Source of the DNA: Octopus sinensis
Lineage: Eukaryota
Direction of reading: 5' to 3'
Assembly: GCF_006345805.1 (NCBI RefSeq)
Contig: NW_021833693.1
Coordinates: 1-56,476 of the forward strand
DNA length: 56,476 nucleotides
Part shown: in pieces, positions 845 through 56,359 of the stretch
How positions within the stretch are numbered: position 1 is the first letter of the stretch
Layout of the letters: the number at the start of each line of letters is the position of its first letter
Notes under the pieces: model-generated
The model's input: only the letters and a program-made list of their open reading frames with translations
Told to the model about the DNA's origin: nothing
Database searches by the model: none
Made by a program: the position numbers and the translations under genes

Positions 845-1203
845 TAAGTGAGATTTTCCTTATTTACCTAAAACTCTATTCCTCTATATATTTTTTTATT
901 CTCCCTTTTTTTATTCTTTTATTTATTCTTCTATCTAATTTACCACTGACTCCTTGACCACTCCCTCAAGTATGATTTTTTTGCGCTATGTCTACCCCCA
1001 AAAAGTCCCCCACCACCACCCCTTTAAACCTGCCTAAATGTATAAATGCCAATACAATTCTTGTTAACTAGCTTCCTGAAGATTTCTCTTGAATGAAACA
1101 GTTCTAGTCCTGTAGAAGCTCCTTCTATATAATAAATTAATTTTACTCTGCTATGTATTGAGTACCTTATTTACTGTGGTTTACCCCGAATCAACCCGAG
1201 ACC

Positions 1204-1205: not shown

Positions 1206-1264
<59 letters not shown>

Positions 1265-1270
<6 letters not shown>

Positions 1271-1478
1271 CTCTGTGTCTGTGTTTGTCCCTCCCTTTAC
1301 CACTTCATAACCGGTGTTGGTGCGTTTACGTCCCCGTAACTGAGCGATTCTGCAAAATACACTGATATAATCAGTCCCAGGTTTAAAAACGATAAACAAT
1401 GAGGTCGATTCTTGTGACTAAAATTCTTCAGGGCGGTACCCCAGCATGGCCGCATTCCAATGACTGAAACAAGTAAAT
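1265..1478 (+). mobile_element. SINE family A, 3' half
   Basis: GTTTACGTCCCCGTAAC..CCAGCATGGCCGC..TGACTGAAACAAGTAAA. Confidence 0.75.
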
Positions 1479-1983
1479 GATGTATAAACCTCCGCCTTGT
1501 TTAACACAACCACCAGGCACCTTGGACCCTTCAGCAGAGTCTCTTCAGGACAGTGACCTTCAGACTAGAAAATGAAAATAGAAAAATGATTATAAGGATG
1601 TTGCGATTCTTGAAAATGGGAAGTGTATTTTCCTCAAAGCAGCGTGCCTGTAGAATGGAAAGCATGGAAAAGGAAGAAGCACTTGAAATAATTCTCCTGG
1701 AGATCAGGAAGACTCAGGATAGGCGGAGCTCCTTCGTTGCTCCCATGAGGTGTTTCCTTTCTGTTGGGGTTGCTCATTTCGTTAGACTTTGTTTTTATCT
1801 TTATAGTTTTTGTTTTCATTTGATTTTATGTGAACCCCCCACTCTCTTACTCCATTACCCCCAATGCTTTCGGCCTTGGTCACCAATAAAAAATCTCTTA
1901 GTGTTGTTCTAAAGGATCGAAGCAGTGACGAGGAGGATCATAGTGATAGAAATGAAAACAAAGTCATTTATTTGCTATAGGAC

Positions 1984-8508: not shown

Positions 8509-8719
8509 CGAGTGTACGTATATATTTACATACATGGATTCACTTATTCACTCACACACATACATATATATATATATGTATATGTACATATGCAATATAT
8601 ATATATGTATATTATGTATATATGTAATGTACACACACATACATGCATACACACACACACACCACACACCACACACATATATATATATATATATTATATT
8701 ATATAATACACACACACAT

Positions 8720-8797
8720 TTGCCAAGGTGCCACGCAGTGGGACTGAACCCGGCACCATATTGTTGGTAAAGCTAGTTACCTCACCCCGCTCCTGCG

Positions 8798-8800
<3 letters not shown>
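8720..8800 (-). mobile_element. SINE family A head
   Basis: CCAAGGTGCCACGCAGTGGGACTGAACCCGG..CCTGCGCCT. Confidence 0.75.
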
Positions 8801-8843
<43 letters not shown>

Positions 8844-9103
8844 AAGGACAACTACTTAATAAGGAAAACTTAACAAGAAATTGTCAGGTAGATAGCGTAA
8901 AAACCTCATAAGAGAAAAAATTTCGAAAATATTATTTTCTTATTGAACATATTAATTTATATAGAGGGCATAAATATACATACATGCCAGGAGGCATTAT
9001 ATATACCTGCCAAACGCTAAGAGGGACAATCAGTCATTTCTACCAAAAATATTACTAATCCCACCGAATGCAATTTTTCAAAGTAAGACATTTAAAAATA
9101 TAT

Positions 9104-9151
9104 AGGCCTGTATCACAGTGATTTCATACTTACGTAATCATCAGCAGGCCT
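9104..9151 (-). ncRNA. Type I hammerhead ribozyme (same family as 15044-15091)
   Basis: Reverse complement matches the 15044-15091 motif. Confidence 0.85.
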
Positions 9152-9681
9152 GAATGTATTATAAATAAACAACGACCTTGCCTCGCTTAAGCCGAACAGC
9201 TAACTGATCAACATCAACGAAGCACATGGGTGAGTTTATATATATTACATCCGGGTGAATGGCAGACTTTTACAAAATTGCATTTCGGGAGAGGAAAAGT
9301 TTTCGGAATAAAAATTTTGCAATTAAGGACAACTACTTAATAAGGAAAACTTAACAAGAAATTGTCAGGTAGATAGCGTAAAAACCTCATAAGAGAAAAA
9401 ATTTCGAAAATAATTATTTCTTATTGAACATATTAATTATATATATGCCCTATATATAAATTAATATGTTCAATAAGAAATAATATTTTCGAAATTTTTT
9501 CTCTTATGAGGTTTTTACGCTATCTACCTGACAATTTCTGTTAAGTTTCCTTATTAAGTAGTTGTCCTTAATTGCAAAATTTATTCCGAAAAAAACTTTT
9601 CCTCTCCCGAAATGCAATTTTGTAAAAGTCTGCCATTCACCCGGATGTAATATATATAAACTCACCCATGTGCTTCGTTGA

Positions 9682-9699
9682 TGTTGATCAGTTAGCTGT
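9682..9699 (+). repeat. Left target-site duplication (18 bp)
   Basis: TGTTGATCAGTTAGCTGT, identical to 14982-14999; present once in the empty site at 9196-9213 (reverse complement). Confidence 0.95.
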
Positions 9700-9894
9700 C
9701 ATTTGCGGAGCAGTTTGTTGCGTTTTGCGTTGTGAGAAATTGCTGCTGCTATTTGAGAGAATTCGAAGTTATAATATCATTGTTTGTGTAAACTGTTCTG
9801 AACAGTACCCGTCGTAAAACGATAATTTTCGCCCTACGGGGCAGAAAATTTTGTTCTAACCATATTCTTGTTACCTTAAAGGTAACCTTCAGAG

Positions 9895-11262
9895 ATGGAG
9901 TTCGACCTAACGTCGAAGGAAGACTTTCCCGTGATGGGAAAAGTGTGAAAAAGAGGAAAACCAAGTACCCAGGCAATCATTCTCGGCCGCGGTGGGCGGC
10001 GCCATGTTGGAGATAGAATTCAAGATTGAACAACTGTACGAATATAGGAATTTGGTAAAACTAGAAGGAGGAGAAATAAGGCTTGTGCCGCCGCAAGCGA
10101 AGGTGCAAGAAATAAGGAAAAGATCGTAATCTATAAAGTGTACAACTTTAAAGAAAAAAAGATCATGGAAGTAAAAAACGAAACCGTTGAGAAATGCTTG
10201 GCCCCGGTGTGGGATAAAATTCGCCATATAGTGAGAGGTGCACGAAGTGCCACGATCGAAGCACACTTTGACACGGCAGAGGTGGCGAAGGAGGTGTCGT
10301 CGTTGACCCTTAAAAACGACGACATCATGCTGCTACCCTCGTATATGGGGAAGAGAACCGCAAAGGTAACGGTTGAAGACATACCCAGAGGATACGACAC
10401 CATGTGGGTAGCAGCGGCGGTCTTACATGATGTGGAACGCGAAATGAACATACTGCAAATGAGAAGGAAGGAAGCGGTACGTTGGAGGGGTCAGACTCTG
10501 GAGCTCCTCGTACAGGCAGAGAACAAGATCTTGGAGAGCCTGCCTGACAGGATTTTTAACGAGGATGGCACGTCCATGAGAGTGTCGGTGGAAGGACGAA
10601 GACCCAGATGCTTCAAGTGTGGAGAAAAGGGTCACGTCCGTTCCAATTGCATCAGGAAAAAAAGAACAGAAGATGCGGCCCCTCCAAGTGTACCCAATGC
10701 GGAGGGAGAGGAAGCTAAGAAGAACAACAAAACGACCAAGACAAATACGGAAGCAAAAATAGACCAAATAGAACCGATGGAATACACCCAAGTTACGCAC
10801 AAAAGAAAAAAAGAAAATACCCTGGACTCCCCTCCCCAAACAAGGAAAAAAACAACTAACACTGCAGACACACACATTAAACAAATCCCCCAACCCTACC
10901 CCCACGGCACTGTTTTCATTGGAAAACAGTTTGCCAAGCCCCTCCCCGTAAAACAAGATCCTAAAAAATGTTTATTGAAAAATGAAAAAATAATTGCGTT
11001 TGATGAAAAAAACGAAAAAGTTTACAAATGCTGCAAACTGTCGAGGTTCATGCTGTATAGCAGAACCTCAGATGGAAAAGCAATTGCGCGCTTCGCCAAG
11101 GTAGGCGAGAACGAATGGAAGGAGGAGGTTCTTCAGGAACACCTGAAGAACCGCCTAATAAGAGATGTCACCAAAGAGGTGTTAGAAGGAAAACTAACAA
11201 TAACCCCGGCAACCACACCAACCCAGAGCCCAGTGGCAACGCCGGTCAAAGCCCTGCAGTAG
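9895..11262 (+). CDS. Tx1 ORF1 (gag-like nucleic-acid-binding protein), frameshifted near its N-terminus
   Basis: Main ORF 10138-11262 contains CFKCGEKGHVRSNC (CX2CX4HX4C). Upstream fragments MEFDLTSKEDFPVMGK (ATG 9895) and EKEENQVPRQSFSAAVGG join by single frameshifts; the start position is inferred. Confidence 0.8.
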
Positions 11263-11346
11263 CGGAAGAAAGGGAAGCAGGCAAAATTAGACCGCCGTGC
11301 TCCCTTTCACAAACGTGAGTATAGTTATTTTCCTCCCTCGCCCACA

Positions 11347-14300
11347 ATGGCCAAGCTGGGCTGCCTAAACATACGTGGAATGGGGTCGAAATGGAAACAA
11401 ATTTGTTTCCTGAACGACCTCACGACACAAGGTATAGATGTTGCTATCGTAACCGAGTCCAAGATGAGCGAGACCCAAGCGTTCTCACCTCTTCTAAATG
11501 GTTTCGAGAAATTTATTTCTCCTAGCCGAGGAGGAGGAAGAGGCGTGGCAGTCTTCATCAGGAAGAGCTTGGACCTGCAGGTAAGTACTGTCTTTCTGGA
11601 CCCAGAAGGCAGGCTGGTTGTCCTGGATGTGACTCACGCAAGTAAACAGTCCTTCAGGTTGGTAGCTGTCTACGCCCCGAACGAGGGTAGACAGACGGGT
11701 TTCTTTCGAAGCCTGGAGCCCTTTCTGGCGACGTCGAAAACAGTAATACTAGTAGGGGACTTTAACACTGTCCTTGAAGCGCACATCGACAGTGTTGGCT
11801 CAACTAATAGGAAGGGGAATCCTAGCCTCAAGGTCTACTGGAGAGCTTTGATCTAGTGGACCGTTACCGACTGGATGAGCCGAGCGTTCCACAGTGGACG
11901 TGGAGAGTAACTACGACGGCTCACACAGATCGTACCTAGATAGGATAATTATAAAAAAAAGAGATAAGGATACGTTTAGTTGTCCACAATTTCATATTGT
12001 ACCTTACTCGGATCACAAGTTTGTGACGTGTGAGGTGCAATTAGACAAGTGTCATAGACAGGGACCCGGGTACTGGAAGCTGAACAAGGCTATTTTGAAT
12101 TGTGAAGACTTCCGTACCCGGATTAAGGAGTTAGTTCAGAGGGCATTGTGCGGCACCGTCATTAACAATAGATGGTGGCACGCCCTCAAAAGAGCCATTC
12201 GATTAGAGTCCGTTAGATTTAGCAATCAGATAAGGACAGATAGAGCTAGTCTAGAGGGCGATTTAGTTAAGAATCTAGACGAGGCAATGGAAGCTGGCTC
12301 TGCATCCGGAGTACTGGCGGCAAGGACGGTATTGTACCGACACCTTGACTCCAAACACGAAGGTTGCAGAGTCAGAGCTAAGCTGCGCGCCGGGAAACGA
12401 GAAGGTGTTAACGTAGCCGGATGGGCCCGTCGTGTGGAGAGTAAGAGAGGCAACAGAGCCTCAATAAAATCTTTGACTGGCGAACAGGGACAAAAGATCT
12501 ATGGACAGGAGGAGATGCAAAAGTTTCTTCACCAGCATTTCGCGCGCGCGTTCGGGGGTGGTGGCCCGCTGGACCGGGGGAGTGCCTTAAGGGACTTCCT
12601 GGCCGGCGGGCCGCGGCTCGCGGGGCGTGAGGGCGGCTGTGAAGGAGCGATCACTCCCGCGGAAATAAGGGAAGTGCTGGCCGAGTGCGCCGGGGAGAAA
12701 TCGCCGGGGCTGGATGGTCTGCCCTACGAGTTTTACCAAAATATGCCGGATTTGTTCGGGGGAATACTGGCAGGCGTCTACACGAACTGGCAGCAGAACG
12801 GGAGAATTCCCAGTTCTGTAAGCCGGGGAGTGGTGACGCTAATCCAGAAAGACCCGAGCAAAGGGGATATGATTAGTAACTACAGGCCCATAACTCTACT
12901 TAATGTAGAGTTAAAGATTTTGGCCAAGGTGTTAGCAAAAAGGTTGACGGTTGTCGTGGAGAAACTTGTAGGGAGAGCACAGACATGTGCAATTCCAGGC
13001 AGGTCGATCCAGGACAACTTCACCTTATACGCTACACCTTAGATAGGGTGGGTAAAGTAACCGGCAAAGGTGGGGGAATGGTCCACTTGGACCAAAGTAA
13101 AGCCTTCGATAGGGTAGACCATGGGTACCTGGCGGCGGTCCTCGAAGCGACCGGACTGGGTCCCGAATTCCGCGGGTGGATCTCCGCTATGTACAGCGGC
13201 ATCAAGTCCACCGTCCAGATAAACGGTTACCTAACAGAACCGTTTTCGATCGAATGTTCAGTACGTCAGGGGTGCCCCTTGTCACCACTTTTGTACGTAT
13301 TGGCTCTCGAGCCACTACTGCGAAGGTTGGAGAGGCTGGGGAGTAACTCAGATGGAATCGGAGGTGGGAGGTCGGTCACTGCCTATGCGGATGACATCAC
13401 CCTCATCGTGTCCAAGGAGGCCCAACTACCTGGTGTAGAGGAGGCTATCAGAGGATACGAGGCGGTGGCAGGAGCAAAGGTTAACAGGGACAAATCGTGG
13501 TCGGCTTGCGCCTCGGCACCTGGAGGAACAAGCCGATATTGTCCAGTGTTGTGGGACACTGGACGGATGGCCCTGTTAAGTTGCTGGGAGTCTGGTTTGG
13601 ACCGGACTCCCAAACGGAGAAGAACTGGAGCGAGGTGACGGCAAGGTGGAGGCCATAATACGGACCTGGTCCGGAAGGTCTCTGTCCTTGAAAGGAAGGG
13701 CGGAGGTGGCGCAGATGTTTATTGCATCCGTAATCACCTACCGCCTGACCGTCGTCCCTTGCCCCGACTCATGGCTTAACAAGTTGGAACGAGCCCTCTT
13801 CCGCTTTTTGTGGAAAGGAGGAAAGCCACTTGTGAGACGCTCCGTGTGCTGTCAAGAACCGTTAAAGGGTGGGTTAGGGATGCCTTGGTTAATGATGCGC
13901 AGACATGCGTTGAGACTAAGACATCTCTGGCACCACCTGGAAGGTGATAAGGTGTGGAGTCCGTTGGCAGAGGGATTTTTTCCGAGACCGGCCTCCTTAG
14001 TTAATTTTAAACCCGGTTACATCAGAAGATGCAATCTGACTCCATGGCAAAAGGAGTGCCGACAGGCACTCACGCTGATCCACAGGACGGGCAAGGCCGG
14101 CTGCGGAAATACCACCTCGGTATTTTATAGAGGGCTGGTAGAGGTAAAAATAAAAACGATGACGTCCTAGGAGGGGCTCTGGGGTTTGATGAAAACCAGC
14201 TTGCCAATCTGTTTAAGAAAACGTTCAGGTCGGGGTATTTGGATAATTTCCAAAGATCCCTGGCTTGGCAGTGCTACAGGAATGCTTTACCTGTTCGCGA

Positions 14301-14738
14301 AAAGTTATCACGGCACGGAGTTCCAGTGCCACCGACGTGTCAAAGATGCGGGCTGGACGATGAAACCGTTCAGCACGCTTTTTTCATTGTCGGAAGTTGA
14401 ACGACTTGATAAGTTACGCAGAACACGTGTTATCGCATCTGGGACGAGTACAGCTGTCGGCTGAGTCTATGATTAAGATGATACCGCCAACTGGACTCTC
14501 GAAGGAAGGTGAGGCATGTTTTCACTGCACGGTTGCAGTGGTAAAGGAATGCATGTGGAGAACGAGAATGGAAGGAACCGCGACAGGGTCATTTGTCTCC
14601 GGGCCCGGCTTGCTCACCTACTTCAGATATCATCTGAGAAGCAAGATGGGACTGGAGAGGAGGACCCTGCCGCGGGGAGTGTATGCGAATAGATGGAAGG
14701 AAGTGGAAAGAAAGGTGGGTACGAGAAGGCCAGCTTGA
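11347..14738 (+). CDS. Tx1 ORF2 (AP endonuclease, reverse transcriptase, CCHC domain), split by several frameshifts
   Basis: APE motifs LNIRG, VYAPN, GDFN, YLDRI and SDH; RT motifs KSPGLDG, YRPITLLN, DQSKAFDRV, RQGCPLSP and YADD; CQRCGLDDETVQHAFFHC read across about 14330-14395. Built from ORF pieces 11347-11856, 11894-13042, 12985-13638, 13646-14170 and 14397-14738. Confidence 0.9.
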
Positions 14739-14981
14739 CCATGGAGGAGAGAGAGGAAGTGGAAGCTGCAGGGCCTCAACAATTGCCGGGGTGTGAAAGC
14801 TCCAGTATAATCACAAAGGTCAGCTACAAGTGTTTGTAACACTAGTTACGCAAAAAACTATTACTTATAACGAATACAAACGAAACTTTTTTTAATCGAT
14901 TCTCTTAAATTTTCTTGTATGTATGTATGTCCTGTATTCGTCCTTTCTATGTATTAATTTTTATAATTGTAATAAAGAAAG

Positions 14982-14999
14982 TGTTGATCAGTTAGCTGT
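14982..14999 (+). repeat. Right target-site duplication (18 bp)
   Basis: TGTTGATCAGTTAGCTGT directly after the AATAAAGAAAG end of the element. Confidence 0.95.
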
Positions 15000-15043
15000 T
15001 CGGCTTAAGCGAGGCAAGGTCGTTTGTTATTTATAATACATTC

Positions 15044-15091
15044 AGGCCTGCTGATGATTACGTAAGTATGAAATCACTGTGATACAGGCCT
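15044..15091 (+). ncRNA. Type I hammerhead ribozyme
   Basis: Stem I AGGCCTG/CAGGCCT; core CTGATGA; stem II T-TAC-GTAA-GTA-T; GAA; stem III ATCAC-T-GTGAT; predicted cleavage after A15084 (AUA). Confidence 0.85.
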
Positions 15092-15242
15092 ATATATTTT
15101 TAAATGTCTTACTTTGAAAAATGCATTCGGTGGGATTAGTAATATTTTTGGTAGAAATGACTGATTGTCCCTCTTAGCGTTTGGCAGGTATATATAATGC
15201 CTCCTGGCATGTATGTATAATTATGCCCTCTATATATAAATA

Positions 15243-15281
<39 letters not shown>

Positions 15282-15310
15282 CATATATATCTATATATAT
15301 GTATAATATA

Positions 15311-15346
<36 letters not shown>

Positions 15347-15518
15347 TGTATGTATGTATGTATGTATAGAAGCTAGCTTCGTGAATCATCGAAGACACTT
15401 TCAAGATTCTTGTAAAAGTTTAATAAATACGTACTCTGTGCATCTGTGCAAAGAAATTATTCTTCAGTCTAATGTTAAATTGTTGTGATATTTTAACTCG
15501 ACATAAAAACATTAATAC

Positions 15519-27729: not shown

Positions 27730-28089
27730 ATATAGTATTATAGTATGTATATATGTATATTATAATATACACACACACATATATTATATATGCACATATA
27801 TGTATGCATATGTATCTCTCTCTCTCTCTCTCCCTAACTATCTATCTATCTATCTATCTAGTTCATGTATAATTACAAGTAAACTACACTTCAGGGAAGA
27901 GAAGGAACGTACATTTATAAATAGAAGTATTCTCTCTTACACATACAAGTATGTGTGTGCGTGTGGTTGCGTGCATGAGTGTATGTATGTGTGTGTGGCT
28001 GTGTGTGTGTGTATGTATGTATGTATGTATGTATGTATGTATGTATGTATGTATGTATGTGTATATGTATGTATTATTTTATTCTTTAA

Positions 28090-28555
28090 TTCTTTTACCT
28101 CTTTCAGTCATTTGTTTGCGGCAATGTTAGAGCACCGCCTCGAAGAGTTTTAGTCGAAGAAACCGGCCCCACGATGTATTTCTTTCTTAAGCCTAGTACT
28201 TGTTCTAGTGGATGTTCCCTGAACCGCTAGATTATGGGGACGTAAACACAGCAACACCGGTTGTCAAGCTGTGATGGAGTGAGAAATACGTAGACAAATA
28301 CTCACATAGACATATACAGACATATACACACACGCACGCACCCACGCTCACACACACACACTCACACACACACACACACACACCACACCACACACACACA
28401 CATACGAAGGGTTTCTTTTCGGTTTCCGTCTACCAGATCCACTCACAACGCTTTGCTCGGCCCGAGGCTATAGTAGAAGACAGATGCCCAAGGTGTCAGG
28501 CAGCGCAACTGAACCCGGAACGTTGTGGTTGGGAAGGAAAACCCACCCCTGTACC
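28090..28555 (-). mobile_element. SINE family A, diverged full-length copy
   Basis: GGGGACGTAAACAC..TTTCCGTCTACC..GGCCCGAGGCTATAGTAGAAGAC..CTGAACCCGGAAC. Confidence 0.8.
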
Positions 28556-37743: not shown

Positions 37744-38933
37744 AGATTGTCAGGGAAGTTCTGAGTGCTTTCTAATATGCAAAAAGGGATATAAACAATC
37801 GACCTTTCACTAAATTTTATTCAATGGAATAATTTTACCATTAATGACCTTTGCTCATCTATCAGGCAATTTAAATATTCTGTCAGCATAAAATTTGACT
37901 GGTTTTGAAGAAAAAACAAAACAAGTGGTAGTCGGATGGCGCAGTATCAAGAGAATATGATGGATCGGGTGAGATATACCAGCCATGTAACTTTGCTCGA
38001 GTAGCCAAAGACACATGTTGTCGGGTATTGTCTAGTTGGAACACCACCTCTTTCCTGGTGGCCATCTTCGGTTTCAATTCTCTGAGTTTTTGGTTCAAAT
38101 TAGCCAGCTGACGACAGTACACATCAGAATTAATGGTTTTGATTTGTGGGAGACGTTCATAATAAATAATGCCTTTATGATTCCACCAAACACAAAGCAT
38201 AGCCTTTTTGGCATCGATATTCGTCTTTGGTTGCTGTTTTGGAGGATCCTTACGCAAGCTCCAGAATCTTTTTCGCACTACATTTTCGTACACCATCCAT
38301 TTTTCATCTCCAGTTTCAAGTTGTTTCAAAAAAGGCAGTCTTCCATTCTGTTTCAAAAGCATATCACAAACGGAAAACCATCCCAAGCATTCTCTTCTGA
38401 AAGTTTGTAAGGGATCCATACCTTATAACGAGAAATGTATCCTAGCTTCATGAGCCGTACTTTTAGAAACTTCCAACTCCTCTGCAAGTTCTCTAGTCGT
38501 GATATTTGAGTTTTCTTCGATATTTGACTTCAAAACATCTTCCAATTTTGACGATTTTCAACTGCAACTATCATCTTCCAAGCTAAATTCTCCAGCTTTA
38601 AATTTTGCAAACCAACTTCGAACAGTAGATTCACATACAGCATCATCATCACCATAAACTTCACAAATGTATTTGCAAGTCTTTGCTGCACTTTCCCCTG
38701 TTTTAGAAAAGAAAAACATTACAACGCGAATAGGAAATTTTTGATTATCTATTTCAAATGTCAATAAAAGGTAACCGGATGGAAAGGTAAATCTAATTTT
38801 AGTCAGGAACAAAGATGAGATGCACTACCACTTCAAGTAATGCCAAAGTTTTAACTGTGTTATGTTTCAGGTGTGTTCAATGAAGCGTTAAAAGATTTAG
38901 CTTAAAACGCTCAGAGCTTTCCGGACAACCTAA
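37743..38933 (-). mobile_element. Decayed mariner (Mos1/SETMAR-type) element with TIRs
   Basis: VCESTVRSWFAKFKAGEFSLED; TGDEKWMVY; KAMLCVWW; QLDNTRQH; PSYSLDTAPSDYHLF; imperfect TIRs TAGATTGTCAGGGAAGTTCTGAG and CTCAGAGCTTTCCGGACAACCTA. Confidence 0.9.
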
Positions 38934-40270: not shown

Positions 40271-40480
40271 CATATATACATACACACGTACGTGTATGTG
40301 TGTTTGTGTATCTTTGTTTACACAGCCGTAACTTAGCGGTTCGCAAAAGAAACCGCGAGAATAAGTACGAAGCTTAAAAAAGTAAGTACAGGGAGTACTC
40401 TGTCCAACTAAACCTTTCAGGGCAGTGCTCCAGCATGGCCGGAGCCGAATCACTGAAACAAATAAACAATAAAAGATTAC
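39832..40480 (+). mobile_element. SINE family A split by a family C HHR element and microsatellites
   Basis: Head at 39832-39958 (AGGCGCAG..GGTTCAGTCCC); 3' half at about 40300-40480 (CGTAACTTAGCGGTTCGC..GTGCTCCAGCATGGCC). Confidence 0.7.
39960..40142 (+). mobile_element. Family C minimal-HHR element, copy 3, nested in a SINE
   Basis: HHR at 40010-40044: GTTT CCGACGA A GAGC TCC GCTC GAA ACGT T AAAC; ends GGATTAAC before (TA)n. Confidence 0.75.
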
Positions 40481-41794
40481 ATGGAAATAGAGAGAAAAAC
40501 CAAAATCACCGATTTCCACCGTGAACATTCAACAAAGTGGATCCGTGGACATTTGCAGGGATTCTTTATAAGCGGATAGGATACAAAGGATGTGTCGTTT
40601 GGAAGGGTTTATGCCTTGTATGTATGTGTCGTATATATGTATGTGTGTATCAGTGAATGCGTGTGAATGTGCATGTGTATTATGGACTCAGCACTGTCAA
40701 ATGGTAAAATGTTTGCTTCACTATCATGAATCCGGATGCGAACCCACTGCGTTGGGTTTTATATATAATTTAAAACTCAATCCGGATCACATTTCTTTTT
40801 CTGTATCATAATTGAACCTGAATGATTGCCTGACCGTGCACGCTACGCTATACAAGCACATCTCATTACGGAATTGTGTTGTGTACTAAACATGAAAGTT
40901 AAAGTGGCTCATGTATAATTTCCGTATTCATTAAATTATATGTGTGCGTGTATGAAGGCTTGCGGGCGCGCACGTATTTTCGTGCACATTCTTCTCAAAG
41001 TCATAATGTCTATATGCATTCCGTGATTAGCCTCACCTCAACAGTTGCCAATGCGTGTTACTTTGAAGAAAACATTCTAAAAATAGAGAGAGTAAACGTG
41101 TATTTCAGAAAATATGTCGGTTGGCATTCCATGTTATTAGACACGCAGTAGCGTCACCAAAGCTATTAAATTTTGAATAGTTTTGATAATATAATAGAAT
41201 CTGTGAGATTGCTTCGAGCAGCTTTATTTAAATTATAAATACTTATTCAGAGTAATAAAACCGAAACTATTAGCACAAAATACATTTATATATACGTAAA
41301 ATACACTTTAATTGTAAACTAACGAAATGTTTCTGTCGTGTGTAAGCTTGGCCAATAATTGTAAATTAGTGGAATGTTTGCATAAGCACGAAGGAAATAA
41401 CAGAACTGTGACATGCAAAGTTTCTTGCACGATCGATTATTTGCAAAGTTAATTTTAATCAGAGTAAATGAATTAACAATTAGTTCACGCAGTACATTCG
41501 TAATATGATGTTAATAATGTTAAGATTTAAATTAGATCGAGAATAAGATCGAATAACATTAAAAGTAAAGTTATTCTTGGTTAACAAACGATTGAATTAT
41601 GAAAGATATAACTGATTGTTTAGCATTGCTAAAAGGCAATTCGAAAAGAAAGCACAGACAATTCGATTGATTCCAATACTTCAGGCTGTTTATTTCGTCG
41701 ATCTCGGAATTGTGAAACGCCGACTCGAATCTGGTGGTAACGAAACAAAGAACTTGAAGGAACGCAACTAAATATTGTTTCTAATTTAGATATA

Positions 41795-55353: not shown

Positions 55354-55945
55354 ATGTGTTGGGAATCCTTGTCCGGTGCTGAATCGATCCCAAAATCTAC
55401 TCATTTCGTGCCAGATACGAGACCAAACATACCTGAAAGTTTCATCTGAATCCACAGAGCGGTCCTTGAGATATCTTATCCACAGACAAACAAACCAACA
55501 ACAAACAAACACGACTGAAAAACAATACCTGCGCCTTCGCTAAGGCAGAGGTAATAATATTTGTTCCCAACACATGCATAAGACATTAACAGTTTTAGAT
55601 AAGCACGCTGCTGCAGAAACTTTTTCGTGGAGAACATCACTTTGTGTCGTGTAAGACGTTTTACACATCTCGTTTGTTCGTTCGTTCGCTCGTTCATTCA
55701 TTCGTTCGTTCCTTTCGTTCTTTTCTTATATCTATGTCTCGATCACTCTCTACTTCCCCTCTTTCTCTCTCACTAATCTTCATTTTTGTTATCCTTCACC
55801 ATCAACTGGCACCACATGTCATTCCAATGAACACTTACCACAGAAGGGTTAAGGCTCTTCCATTCCTCATCAGGTTTATTCCAACGTTTCAACCAGTTCC
55901 TCATTGGGCTTATTTTAGCCATGTGGATCCTCCCTGCTTTCTTTA

Positions 55946-56359
55946 TTACTCTTTACTCTTTTACTCTTTTACTTGTTTCAGTCATTTGACTGCAGCCATG
56001 CTGGAGCACTGCCTTTAGTCGAGTAAATCAACCCCGGGACTTATTCTTTGTAAGCCCAGTACTTATTCTATCGGTCTCTTTTGCCGAACCGCTAAGTGAC
56101 GGGGACGTAAACACACCAGCATCGGTTGTCAAGCAATGCTAGGGGGACAAACACAGACACACAAACACACACATATATATATATATACATATATACGACA
56201 GGCTTCTTTCAGTTTCCGTCTACCAAATCCACTCACAAGGCATTGGTCGGCCCGGGGCTATAGCAGAAGACACTTGCCCAAGATGCCACACAGTGGGACT
56301 GAACCCGGGACCATGTGGCTGGTTAGCAAGCTACTTACCACACAGCCACTCCTGCGCCT
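55946..56359 (-). mobile_element. Full-length tRNA-derived SINE, family A (Octopus-type)
   Basis: Minus strand head AGGCGCAGGAGTGGCTGTGTGGTAAG with B-box-like GGTTCAGTCCC; internal TA/TG tract; 3' CCAGCATGGCTGCAGTCAAATGACTGAAACAAG; (AGTAAAAG)n tail. Confidence 0.9.

What the first reader, a model, noticed from the sequence alone, without database searches (positions are those of the whole stretch)
9682..15091. Tx1-clade retrotransposon inserted into a hammerhead-ribozyme repeat, with its empty target 500 bp away
Seen: a 5.28-kb APE/RT element is bounded by an exact 18-bp TSD inside the 481-bp HHR repeat. The uninterrupted copy at 9181-9230 (reverse complement ...CTTCGTTGA-TGTTGATCAGTTAGCTGT-TCGGCTT...) reproduces both junctions, which fixes the insertion point. 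Known: Tx1-clade elements are often sequence-specific for multicopy targets (U2 snRNA, tRNA arrays, 5S rDNA, microsatellites, and another transposon for Xenopus Tx1). Inference: this may be a family that targets a ribozyme-bearing pLTR/retrozyme, a parasite of a parasite. I do not recall such a target being described, but one copy cannot show specificity.
Basis: partly seen in the sequence, partly recalled or inferred. Interest (0 to 1): 0.88.

Follow-up and report, generated by a model that had tools for sequence, protein, structure and literature searches.

The report
Dead LINE nested in ribozyme-motif repeat
A decayed 5.3-kb L1/Tx1-type retrotransposon sits, with a perfect 18-bp target duplication, inside one arm of a small Penelope-style repeat that carries a hammerhead-ribozyme-like motif. 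It is a cleanly documented single nested insertion, and nothing available shows that the family aims at such repeats.

Summary
A 5,282-bp non-LTR retrotransposon (9700-14981, + strand) is flanked by an exact 18-bp duplication, TGTTGATCAGTTAGCTGT. It interrupts the right arm of an inverted pair of a 481-bp repeat. The left arm holds the intact, empty site at 9196-9213.

The element has a zinc-knuckle ORF1 and an ORF2 with APE, RT and zf-RVT domains. Human L1 ORF2p is the closest solved structure and octopod LINEs are the closest relatives. This fits the "L1-Tx1" class already catalogued in Octopus, but no Tx1 phylogeny could be run. The copy is dead, with at least 9 frameshifts.

The host repeat has a hammerhead-like motif with a complete catalytic core. 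The motif is far beyond chance but far below Rfam's threshold, and helix II is weak. The repeat has Penelope-style architecture: a partial tandem plus an inverted copy, flanked by (TA)n.

The claim that the family targets ribozyme repeats rests on one copy. No second copy exists in any collection I could reach. Seven 3' junctions of the nearest relatives all have different flanks, mostly T/AT-rich or (ATT)n, and none lies in a hammerhead repeat.

Most likely this is an ordinary nested insertion in a repeat-rich genome. Interest is low to moderate.

The parts
8800..8834 (.). (TA)n microsatellite flanking the left end of the repeat complex
   Evidence: Read directly, families D2/D5.
8827..9438 (-). 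Left arm: 1.27 uninterrupted units of the 481-bp repeat, ordered A-B-A when read on the minus strand
   Evidence: Direct repeat 8827-8957 / 9308-9438 at spacing 481, 96% identical (D6). BLAST of the unit against the window. Arm-to-arm alignment.
9196..9213 (-). Empty target site: a single copy of the 18-mer in the uninterrupted arm
9104..9151 (-). Hammerhead-like motif in the left arm, identical to the one in the right arm
   Evidence: Custom descriptor scan.
9439..9458 (.). Centre of the inverted pair. It includes a short piece resembling the 3' end of a unit (ATGCCCT.TATATA).
9459..9681 (+). Right arm, 5' part of the interrupted unit. It includes a TATA-like box, TATATATAAA, at 9651-9660.
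   Evidence: Inverted repeats I3-I5.
9682..9699 (+). Left copy of the 18-bp target-site duplication
   Evidence: D8.
9700..14981 (+). Full-length but degenerate L1/Tx1-type non-LTR retrotransposon, 5,282 bp. The 5' UTR is about 196 nt and there is no poly(A). It ends ...ATTGTAATAAAGAAAG, with AATAAA at 14971-14976.
   Evidence: The 3' terminus TAATAAAGAAA is shared with relatives.
9896..11259 (+). ORF1, broken by about 2 frameshifts, with a CCHC zinc knuckle at about 10606-10650
   Evidence: tblastn matches to ORF1 of relatives.
11347..14735 (+). ORF2, in order: APE (about 11420-11990), RT (about 12860-13500), zf-RVT (about 14250-14420). It is broken by about 7 frameshifts, near 11820, 11915, 13020, 13500, 13643, 14145 and 14382.
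   Evidence: Pfam on the fragments and on the conceptual join. Frame changes located by tblastn with P0001-P0003. Sequence context of the frameshifts. PDB match to human L1 ORF2p, 1e-56.
14982..14999 (+). Right copy of the 18-bp target-site duplication
   Evidence: D8.
15000..15248 (+). Right arm, 3' part of the interrupted unit
   Evidence: Inverted repeats I1 and I2, 98-99% complementary to 8958-9213.
15044..15091 (+). Hammerhead-like motif: AGGCCUG-CUGAUGA-U.UAC.GUAA.GUA.U-GAAA-UCACUGUGAU-A|CAGGCCU. The predicted cleavage is after 15084. The motif starts 44 nt beyond the right TSD copy and has the same orientation as the LINE.
   Evidence: Descriptor scan: 3 hits against 0.005 expected. Weak Rfam HH9 match, 17.3 bits. 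The MFE fold contains helices I and II.
15229..15367 (.). AT-rich / (TA)n / (GTAT)n microsatellites flanking the right end of the repeat complex

Best explanation
This is a single, ordinary nested insertion.

First, a 481-bp non-coding repeat was laid down between (TA)n tracts as a partial tandem plus an inverted copy. It carries a hammerhead-like motif and has the architecture typical of Penelope-like elements and their non-autonomous derivatives.

Later, a full-length L1/Tx1-type LINE inserted into the right arm by target-primed reverse transcription. The element's endonuclease nicked the bottom strand opposite 9681|9682 (bottom strand 5'-...GATCAACA^TCAACG-3'). Reverse transcription started at the RNA's defined 3' end (...AAUAAAGAAAG, no poly(A)). 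The top strand was cut 18 bp downstream (AGCTGT^TCGG), and fill-in produced the 18-bp duplication.

The copy then decayed through at least 9 frameshifts. The other arm kept the empty site.

The boundaries, TSD, empty site, domain content, decay and order of events (repeat first, LINE second) are shown. The nick positions follow from the standard TPRT model. That the site was not specifically sought is inferred.
For: - Exact TSD and a clean empty site.
- LINE domain set and L1-type affinity.
- The element is full length. Its 5' UTR and ORF1 are collinear with an Argonauta relative that has a comparable 17-bp TSD.
- The 3' terminus TAATAAAGAAA is conserved among relatives, so 14981 is the true end.
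- The seven 3' junctions seen in relatives all have different flanks: TATTTTTAAA, (ATT)n twice, GTTATTTGCT, TAATTTAACG, TTGTCCGCCC. None is a hammerhead repeat or a GTTGATGTTGATCAG-like site.
- No hammerhead descriptor hit in L001-L023, the loci held when the scan was run. The loci that carry the seven relatives' junctions (L024, L025, L029) were not scanned with it; only their flank sequences were read.
- About 66% of the O. vulgaris genome is repeats, so a LINE landing in another repeat is the expected outcome (PMC13282606).
- The window itself is dense in SINEs, microsatellites and a mariner remnant.
Against: - Many Tx1 families are target-specific, including for other transposons (PMC4494074), so the prior for specificity is not negligible.
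- The nick site here is not AT-rich, unlike those of the relatives, and it falls between two GTTGAT repeats.
- A 27-nt block equal to 9 nt of left flank plus the whole TSD recurs exactly in an unrelated metagenome contig and ends exactly at the TSD boundary. This is unexplained.
- The family itself could not be sampled beyond this one copy.
Confidence: 0.8

Rival explanations
1. Target-specific family. The element's endonuclease recognises the CTTCGTTGA|TGTTGATCAGTTAGCTGT block of the hammerhead-bearing repeat, so the family lives inside this repeat family. It may profit from the TATA-like box about 40 nt upstream and from the hammerhead about 100 nt downstream to make and trim its transcript.
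For: - Tx1 families often target multicopy sequences, including DNA transposons, LTR elements and satellites (PMC4494074).
- The insertion has the same orientation as the repeat's hammerhead motif. It lies 22-49 nt downstream of TATATATAAA and 44 nt upstream of the motif.
- The site is not AT-rich, unlike the relatives' sites.
- There is no poly(A), as in many stringent or site-specific LINEs.
- The 27-nt target block recurs in contigs L021/L014.
Against: - Only one copy exists, so there is no statistical basis.
- The second identical target 470 bp away is unoccupied.
- All seven relatives' junctions differ and none is in such a repeat.
- L021 has no LINE and no hammerhead near the 27-mer.
Confidence: 0.07
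2. Loose sequence preference rather than a specific target. The lineage's endonuclease favours T-rich or short-tandem DNA such as (ATT)n or TTATT. The GTTGAT-GTTGAT tandem in the repeat happened to resemble such a site.
For: - The flanks directly after the 3' end begin TATTTT, AATTAT, ATTATT, GTTATT, TAATTT, TTGTCC and TGTTGA.
- Two relatives abut (ATT)n.
- The Argonauta copy lies next to (ATTT)n.
- Kibi and Koshi in the Tx1 clade target microsatellites (PMC4494074).
Against: - Only seven junctions were seen, from several different families.
- The (ATT)n could be a 3' tail of the element rather than its target.
- No motif is shared strictly by all seven.
Confidence: 0.11
3. Artefact. The junctions reflect an assembly error across a palindromic repeat, or the frameshifts are sequencing errors in an intact element.
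For: - The host locus is a near-perfect palindrome, which is hard to assemble (I3-I5).
- Two of the frameshifts lie in homopolymer runs.
Against: - Both junctions carry the same 18-mer, and the joined flanks reproduce the other arm base for base. A chimera would not do this.
- Most frameshifts are not in homopolymers.
Confidence: 0.02

Closest known systems
L1-Tx1 LINE families of octopods (RepeatMasker class LINE/L1-Tx1; 13 recently active families and 421 insertions reported in Octopus vulgaris, PMC13282606)
   Same: APE + RT + zf-RVT ORF2 and a CCHC-knuckle ORF1. Human L1 ORF2p is the closest solved structure. The best relatives are Argonauta hians proteins and octopod-like metagenome contigs, at 64-66% identity in RT.
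   Different: I cannot say whether this family is one of the 13 already curated. Nothing above 66% amino-acid identity was found in the collections. This copy is dead.
Target-specific Tx1-clade elements: Tx1L in the piggyBac-type Tx1D, Tx1-Mar in Mariner-N4_AMi, Keno in U2 snRNA genes, Kibi/Koshi in microsatellites (PMC4494074)
   Same: An L1-superfamily element inserted in another repeated element with a long TSD (18 bp here, 17 bp in the Argonauta relative) and no poly(A).
   Different: Specificity in those families rests on many independent copies at one site. Here there is one copy, an unoccupied identical site next door, and relatives at unrelated sites. A Penelope-derived or hammerhead-bearing target is not among the targets listed in that paper.
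Penelope-like element pLTRs and animal non-LTR retrozymes (PMC8557442; PMC7229834; bioRxiv 10.64898/2026.07.22.740005)
   Same: The host repeat is non-coding and a few hundred bp long. It carries a type-I hammerhead-like motif and is arranged as a partial tandem with an adjacent inverted copy. It sits in (TA)n. This is the insertion architecture and target described for PLEs.
   Different: Each arm has only one motif, so no unit-length RNA could be released from this locus. Helix II is 3 bp with U.U at 10.1/11.1 instead of the usual G-C. The motif is far below Rfam's thresholds. No similarity to a PLE could be tested.
R2 elements with an HDV-like ribozyme
   Same: Only as an analogy for the speculative reading, in which a LINE co-transcribed with its target is trimmed by a ribozyme.
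   Different: In R2 the ribozyme belongs to the element and lies at its 5' end. Here the motif belongs to the host repeat and lies downstream. No evidence of co-transcription exists.

Membership tests
L1 superfamily (L1/Tx1) non-LTR retrotransposon | ORF2 with an N-terminal apurinic-type endonuclease, a central RT and a C-terminal zinc-binding region | tested here: met
   Pfam on the conceptual ORF2: Exo_endo_phos 1.1e-9, RVT_1 3e-31, zf-RVT 2.4e-10, in that order. The fragments scored separately agree.
L1 superfamily (L1/Tx1) non-LTR retrotransposon | Closer to L1 than to other LINE groups | tested here: met
   Human L1 ORF2p scores 1.2e-56 over residues 6-856. R2 proteins score about 1e-24, over the RT only. 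This compares solved structures only.
Tx1 clade | RT-domain phylogeny places the element with Repbase Tx1 references (RTclass1 criterion) | not testable with these tools
   No Tx1 reference sequence was obtainable, and none of the database hits carried a Tx1 name.
Tx1 clade | ORF1 of the RRM/zf-CCHC type rather than the mammalian coiled-coil type | tested here: met
   A zf-CCHC match in ORF1 at E = 4.7e-4, 20.6 bits, just under Pfam's cut-off of 20.8. The motif CFKCGEKGHVRSNC is visible in the sequence. PMC5203782 describes this type as consistent with Tx1 in non-mammalian animals.
Target-specific Tx1 family | The same sequence flanks a large share of independent copies (more than 20% in PMC4494074) | not testable with these tools
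   Only one copy of the family is available. For related families, 7 of 7 junctions differ.
TPRT insertion | Target-site duplication flanking a complete 3' end, with an empty site that reproduces both junctions | tested here: met
   Exact 18-bp TSD, and the joined flanks equal the other arm.
Hammerhead ribozyme (type I) | Catalytic core CUGANGA ... GAAA ... UH in the right order, between three helices | tested here: met
   The core is complete. Helix I has 7 bp and helix III up to 5 bp, capped by a very small loop. Observed: 3 motifs in the window, 2 of them independent, against 0.005 per dinucleotide shuffle.
Hammerhead ribozyme (type I) | A stable helix II closed by G10.1-C11.1 | tested here: not met
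   Helix II is UAC/GUA with a GUAA loop, and 10.1/11.1 is U.U. The unrelated motif at 1070-1126 has the same layout.
Hammerhead ribozyme (type I) | Reaches Rfam's curated score for a hammerhead family | tested here: not met
   No hit at gathering score. No hammerhead hit at E<=10 in a 1-kb search. HH9 scores 17.3 bits against 52 in a 91-base search.
Hammerhead ribozyme (type I) | Self-cleavage | not testable with these tools
   This needs an in-vitro transcription and cleavage assay.
Penelope-like element derivative / animal non-LTR retrozyme | Partial tandem (pseudo-LTR) with an adjacent inverted copy, inserted in (TA)n | tested here: met
   1.27 units in minus orientation abut about 1.04 units in plus orientation, and both outer ends lie in (TA)n. 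The architecture is as described in PMC8557442.
Penelope-like element derivative / animal non-LTR retrozyme | A tandem array with a ribozyme in each unit, so that unit-length RNA can be released | tested here: not met
   There is one motif per arm and no second motif in the 1.27-unit arm.
Penelope-like element derivative / animal non-LTR retrozyme | Sequence similarity to the pLTR of an autonomous PLE of the same genome | not testable with these tools
   The window holds no PLE, and no cephalopod repeat library was available.

The most novel reading that the evidence does not exclude
The element belongs to an L1/Tx1 family that specifically recognises a 27-nt, promoter-proximal block (CTTCGTTGA|TGTTGATCAGTTAGCTGT) of a Penelope-derived, hammerhead-bearing repeat. 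It inserts in the sense orientation between the repeat's TATA-like box and its ribozyme. The host repeat would then supply both transcription and 3' trimming of the LINE RNA. This would be a parasite of a parasite that uses its host's ribozyme.
Probability: 0.06. Interest if true: 0.6.

Novelty: new member of a known kind. Interest (0 to 1): 0.22.

Why it matters
As it stands, this is a textbook-clean example of a nested LINE insertion, with the filled and empty sites side by side. It is useful for annotation and for dating, but it is not a new phenomenon.

If a genome-wide survey showed the family to be confined to this site, it would add a ribozyme-bearing Penelope derivative to the list of Tx1 targets. 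That list already includes DNA transposons, LTR elements, satellites, snRNA genes, 5S rRNA genes and microsatellites. It would also raise the testable idea that a LINE exploits a host repeat's promoter and hammerhead.

A smaller point stands on its own. Two unrelated hammerhead-like motifs in this window share a non-canonical U.U at positions 10.1/11.1 and escape Rfam. This suggests a cephalopod hammerhead variant that current models under-detect.

Tried and rejected
- **Rfam.** Searches at gathering score over the window, L001/L002 and L021 found nothing. The E-value search of 8700-9720 returned only spurious plant-miRNA hairpin matches caused by the palindrome.
- **More copies of the family.** Three protein searches found nothing above 66% identity. 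Twelve contig look-ups reached relatives only. A protein-pattern scan of bacterial/archaeal genomes and of viral contigs found nothing.
- **DNA scans for the target.** The viral collection gave 2 chance hits. The metagenomes gave 19 hits, about the chance number, and only L021/L014 extend to 27 nt. The genome collection gave none.
- **Source of the best early hit.** I tried to identify assembly GCA_024449705.1 through the literature and found nothing.
- **A SINE partner.** One SINE copy at 55937-55952 ends in GTAATAAAGAAAG like the LINE. Aligning five SINE copies showed that their common end is GACTGAAACAAGTAAAAGA plus a variable A-rich tail, so I rejected the partnership.
- **A link between the two hammerhead elements.** The third hammerhead-like element (845-1200) has no sequence similarity to the 481-bp unit.
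- **A TSD-flanked insertion next to the 27-mer in L021.** There is none within 14 kb.
- **TSDs of other relatives.** None was found for L028 or L029.
- **A match between L002 and the window.** The 50-bp match was only a (CAT)n tract.

Full report
- The 18-mer TGTTGATCAGTTAGCTGT occurs at 9682-9699 and 14982-14999, with 5,282 bp between the two copies (D8).
- The third copy in the window is on the minus strand at 9196-9213, in an uninterrupted copy of the same repeat. Read in reverse complement it gives CTTCGTTGA-TGTTGATCAGTTAGCTGT-TCGGCTT, so it reproduces both junctions.
- The 27-mer of left flank plus TSD occurs exactly twice, against 0.00 expected by chance.
- I deleted the insert and one TSD copy in a script and aligned the joined right arm to the left arm. 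The match runs unbroken through the insertion point. The arms differ by about 3 substitutions and 6 small indels in about 481 bp, mostly in A/T runs.
- Neither the insert nor the repeat unit occurs elsewhere in the 56-kb window.

**The inserted element is a LINE of the L1 superfamily.**
- Stop-to-stop maps and Pfam show an ORF1 with a CCHC zinc knuckle.
- ORF2 carries Exo_endo_phos, RVT_1 and, once the frames are joined conceptually, zf-RVT, in that order.
- Human L1 ORF2p is by far the best solved relative, at 1.2e-56 over residues 6-856. R2 proteins match only over the RT, at about 1e-24.
- An ORF1 of the CCHC type is what PMC5203782 calls consistent with Tx1 in non-mammalian animals.
- The closest database proteins are a hypothetical protein of the octopod Argonauta hians (64% identity in RT) and short metagenome contigs at 65-66%. 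A cuttlefish protein (Acanthosepion pharaonis) scores 48%. An octopod origin of the window is therefore plausible.
- Octopus vulgaris is reported to hold 13 recently active L1-Tx1 families and 30 Penelope families (PMC13282606).
- "Tx1 clade" therefore fits every indirect line of evidence. No Tx1 reference sequence was available, so the defining RT phylogeny was not done.

**The copy is full length but dead.**
- It has a 5' UTR of about 196 nt and an ORF1 collinear with the Argonauta relative.
- tblastn with three relatives shows about seven frame changes in ORF2, and ORF1 needs about two more. Only some of these lie in homopolymer runs.
- There is no poly(A). The element ends ...ATTGTAATAAAGAAAG.
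- The relatives end ...CCCTTGTGGCTAATAAAGAAAT(C). The shared TAATAAAGAAA terminus confirms 14981 as the true 3' end.

**The host repeat looks like a Penelope-style derivative.**
- It is a 481-bp non-coding unit (D6).
- The left arm, 8827-9438, holds 1.27 units in minus orientation. The right arm, 9459-9699 plus 15000-15248, holds about one unit in plus orientation. The two 5' ends face each other, and both outer ends run into (TA)n.
- PMC8557442 describes this layout for Penelope-like elements: partial tandems forming pseudo-LTRs, an adjacent inverted copy, a (TA)n target and a hammerhead motif in the pseudo-LTR.

**The hammerhead motif is real as a pattern, but activity is unproven.**
- Each arm carries AGGCCUG-CUGAUGA-UUACGUAAGUAU-GAAA-UCACUGUGAU-A|CAGGCCU (15044-15091 on the plus strand, 9104-9151 on the minus strand).
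- My descriptor requires the core, three helices and a UH cleavage site. It found these two copies and one unrelated motif at 1070-1126. Dinucleotide shuffles of the window gave a mean of 0.005 hits. The motif is therefore not chance.
- Rfam gives nothing at its thresholds. It gives only 17.3 bits against 52 for HH9 when 91 bases are searched alone.
- Helix II is only 3 bp, with U.U where G10.1-C11.1 normally sits.
- The minimum-energy fold contains helices I and II.
- There is one motif per arm, so this locus could not release a unit-length RNA.

**How the insertion most likely happened.**
- The left arm is empty and the arms are about 98% identical, so the repeat complex formed first and the LINE entered afterwards.
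- Under the standard TPRT model, the bottom strand was nicked at 5'-GATCAACA^TCAACG-3', opposite 9681|9682. The top strand was cut 18 bp downstream, at AGCTGT^TCGG.
- The nick falls between two GTTGAT hexamers and is not AT-rich.
- The LINE has the same orientation as the repeat's hammerhead motif. Its 5' end lies about 40 nt (39 bp) downstream of a TATATATAAA box, and its 3' end lies 62 nt upstream of the motif, which begins 44 nt beyond the right TSD copy.

- Three protein searches, twelve contig look-ups and DNA or protein pattern scans of the viral, metagenome and prokaryote-genome collections produced no second copy.
- I could examine the nearest relatives. An Argonauta element, L024:6886-12651, has 49% ORF2 identity and is full length. 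It has a 17-bp TSD, TATTTTTAAAATTTGTA, in AT-rich DNA beside (ATTT)n.
- A metagenome relative, L025, abuts (ATT)n. A second Argonauta element, in L029, abuts AATTATTATTATTAT. Three further short copies of the conserved 3' end in L029 have yet other flanks.
- That makes seven junctions with seven different flanks. None is a hammerhead repeat or resembles the window's target.
- The descriptor found no hammerhead in L001-L023, the loci held when it was run. L024, L025 and L029, which carry these seven junctions, were fetched later and were not scanned with it.
- An identical target 470 bp from the insertion is unoccupied.
- In a genome that is about two-thirds repeats (PMC13282606), a LINE landing in another repeat needs no special explanation.
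- Against this, Tx1 families are often target-specific, and specificity can differ between close families (PMC4494074).
- I put the specific-target reading at about 6-7%, a looser T-rich or short-tandem preference at about 11%, and an ordinary nested insertion at about 80%.

**One result stays unexplained.**
- The metagenome scan with the 18-mer gave 19 hits, about the number expected by chance.
- Two of them, L021 and L014, are the same sequence from two samples. They match 27 nt exactly: the 9 nt left of the insertion point plus the entire TSD. The match ends exactly at the TSD boundary, and a TATATAAA box lies upstream, as in the window.
- The flanks are otherwise unrelated. The contig has no LINE, no known RNA family, no hammerhead and no second copy of the 18-mer.
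- A rough chance estimate is 1e-3. It may be a conserved promoter-proximal block, or it may be coincidence.

**Comparison with what is known.**
- The element works like, and very probably is, an L1-Tx1 LINE of the kind already catalogued in octopuses.
- The host repeat works like a Penelope pseudo-LTR or an animal non-LTR retrozyme. It fails two of the tested features: canonical helix II with the Rfam score, and a multi-ribozyme tandem at this locus.
- Tx1 elements nested specifically in other transposons are well known: Tx1L in Tx1D, and Tx1-Mar in Mariner-N4_AMi (PMC4494074). Even if specificity were shown, it would be a new target for a known behaviour.
- I found no paper describing a LINE that targets a hammerhead-bearing repeat.

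**Verdict.** The Tx1-type label is plausible. "Hammerhead repeat" is acceptable as a motif-level description. The specificity hypothesis is unsupported and somewhat weakened. This is a new member of a known kind, of low to moderate interest.

Noticed in passing
window 1070-1126 (+), within the unique segment 845-1200: An unrelated second hammerhead-like motif: AGCUUC-CUGAAGA-UUUCUCUUGAAU-GAAA-CAGUUCUAGUCCUGU-A|GAAGCU. It lies in a roughly 360-bp segment between (TG/TA)n microsatellites. It has the same layout as the 481-bp repeat's motif (3-bp helix II, U.U at 10.1/11.1) but no sequence similarity to it. Rfam gives no hammerhead hit. This may be a cephalopod hammerhead variant that current models miss.
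   Followed up: partly
L021:9703-9729 and L014:5115-5141 (JGI contigs Ga0056128_1006943 and Ga0209367_1016194): An exact 27-nt match to the window's insertion site (9 nt of left flank plus the 18-nt TSD). It ends exactly at the TSD boundary and has a TATATAAA box 22-27 nt upstream, as in the window. Everything else is unrelated. The contig has no LINE, no Rfam family and no hammerhead. The rough probability by chance is about 1e-3.
   Followed up: partly
L002 (ENA ERZ21867824 ctg67091l) and L027 (ENA ERZ26052130 ctg11195c): More distant relatives of the LINE (37-41% ORF2 identity) occur as head-to-tail tandem arrays. The periods are 6,593 bp (96% identity between units) and 7,547 bp (94%). One of them was assembled as a 'circular' contig. 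Little room is left for any target between units.
   Followed up: partly
L029:9179, 10840, 14215 (+) and 11826 (-); L024:12639; L025:2007: The 3'-terminal motif CCCTTGTGGCTAATAAAGAAAT(C) is conserved among octopod relatives. It recurs four times in 17 kb of Argonauta DNA, three times without adjacent ORF2 homology. These are probably 5'-truncated copies or a non-autonomous partner that shares the LINE tail.
   Followed up: no
P0178: A LINE C-terminal fragment, 49% identical to this element, is deposited at NCBI as 'MAG: zinc-binding domain-containing protein [Herbaspirillum sp.]'. This is almost certainly animal DNA contaminating a bacterial metagenome-assembled genome.
   Followed up: no
window 9365-9531: Rfam E-value hits to plant microRNA families (MIR8562, MIR2606, MIR7807) come from the long perfect hairpin at the centre of the inverted repeat. 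They are not microRNA genes.
   Followed up: yes
window 55901-56330 (-), 1262-1480 (+), 28078-28532 (-), 40315-40493 (+) and others: Several old copies (70-80% identity) of a SINE ending in GACTGAAACAAGTAAAAGA plus an A-rich tail. Fragments also match Argonauta DNA (L024). One copy ends in GTAATAAAGAAAG like the LINE, but the other copies do not share this.
   Followed up: yes
window 37883-38419 (-): An ORF with a mariner-type transposase domain (Pfam Transposase_1, 1.4e-25): a DNA-transposon remnant.
   Followed up: no
L024:12020-12290 and 12420-12640: The 3' UTR of the Argonauta relative contains an internal duplication of about 250 bp. This accounts for most of its extra length compared with the window's element.
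   Followed up: no
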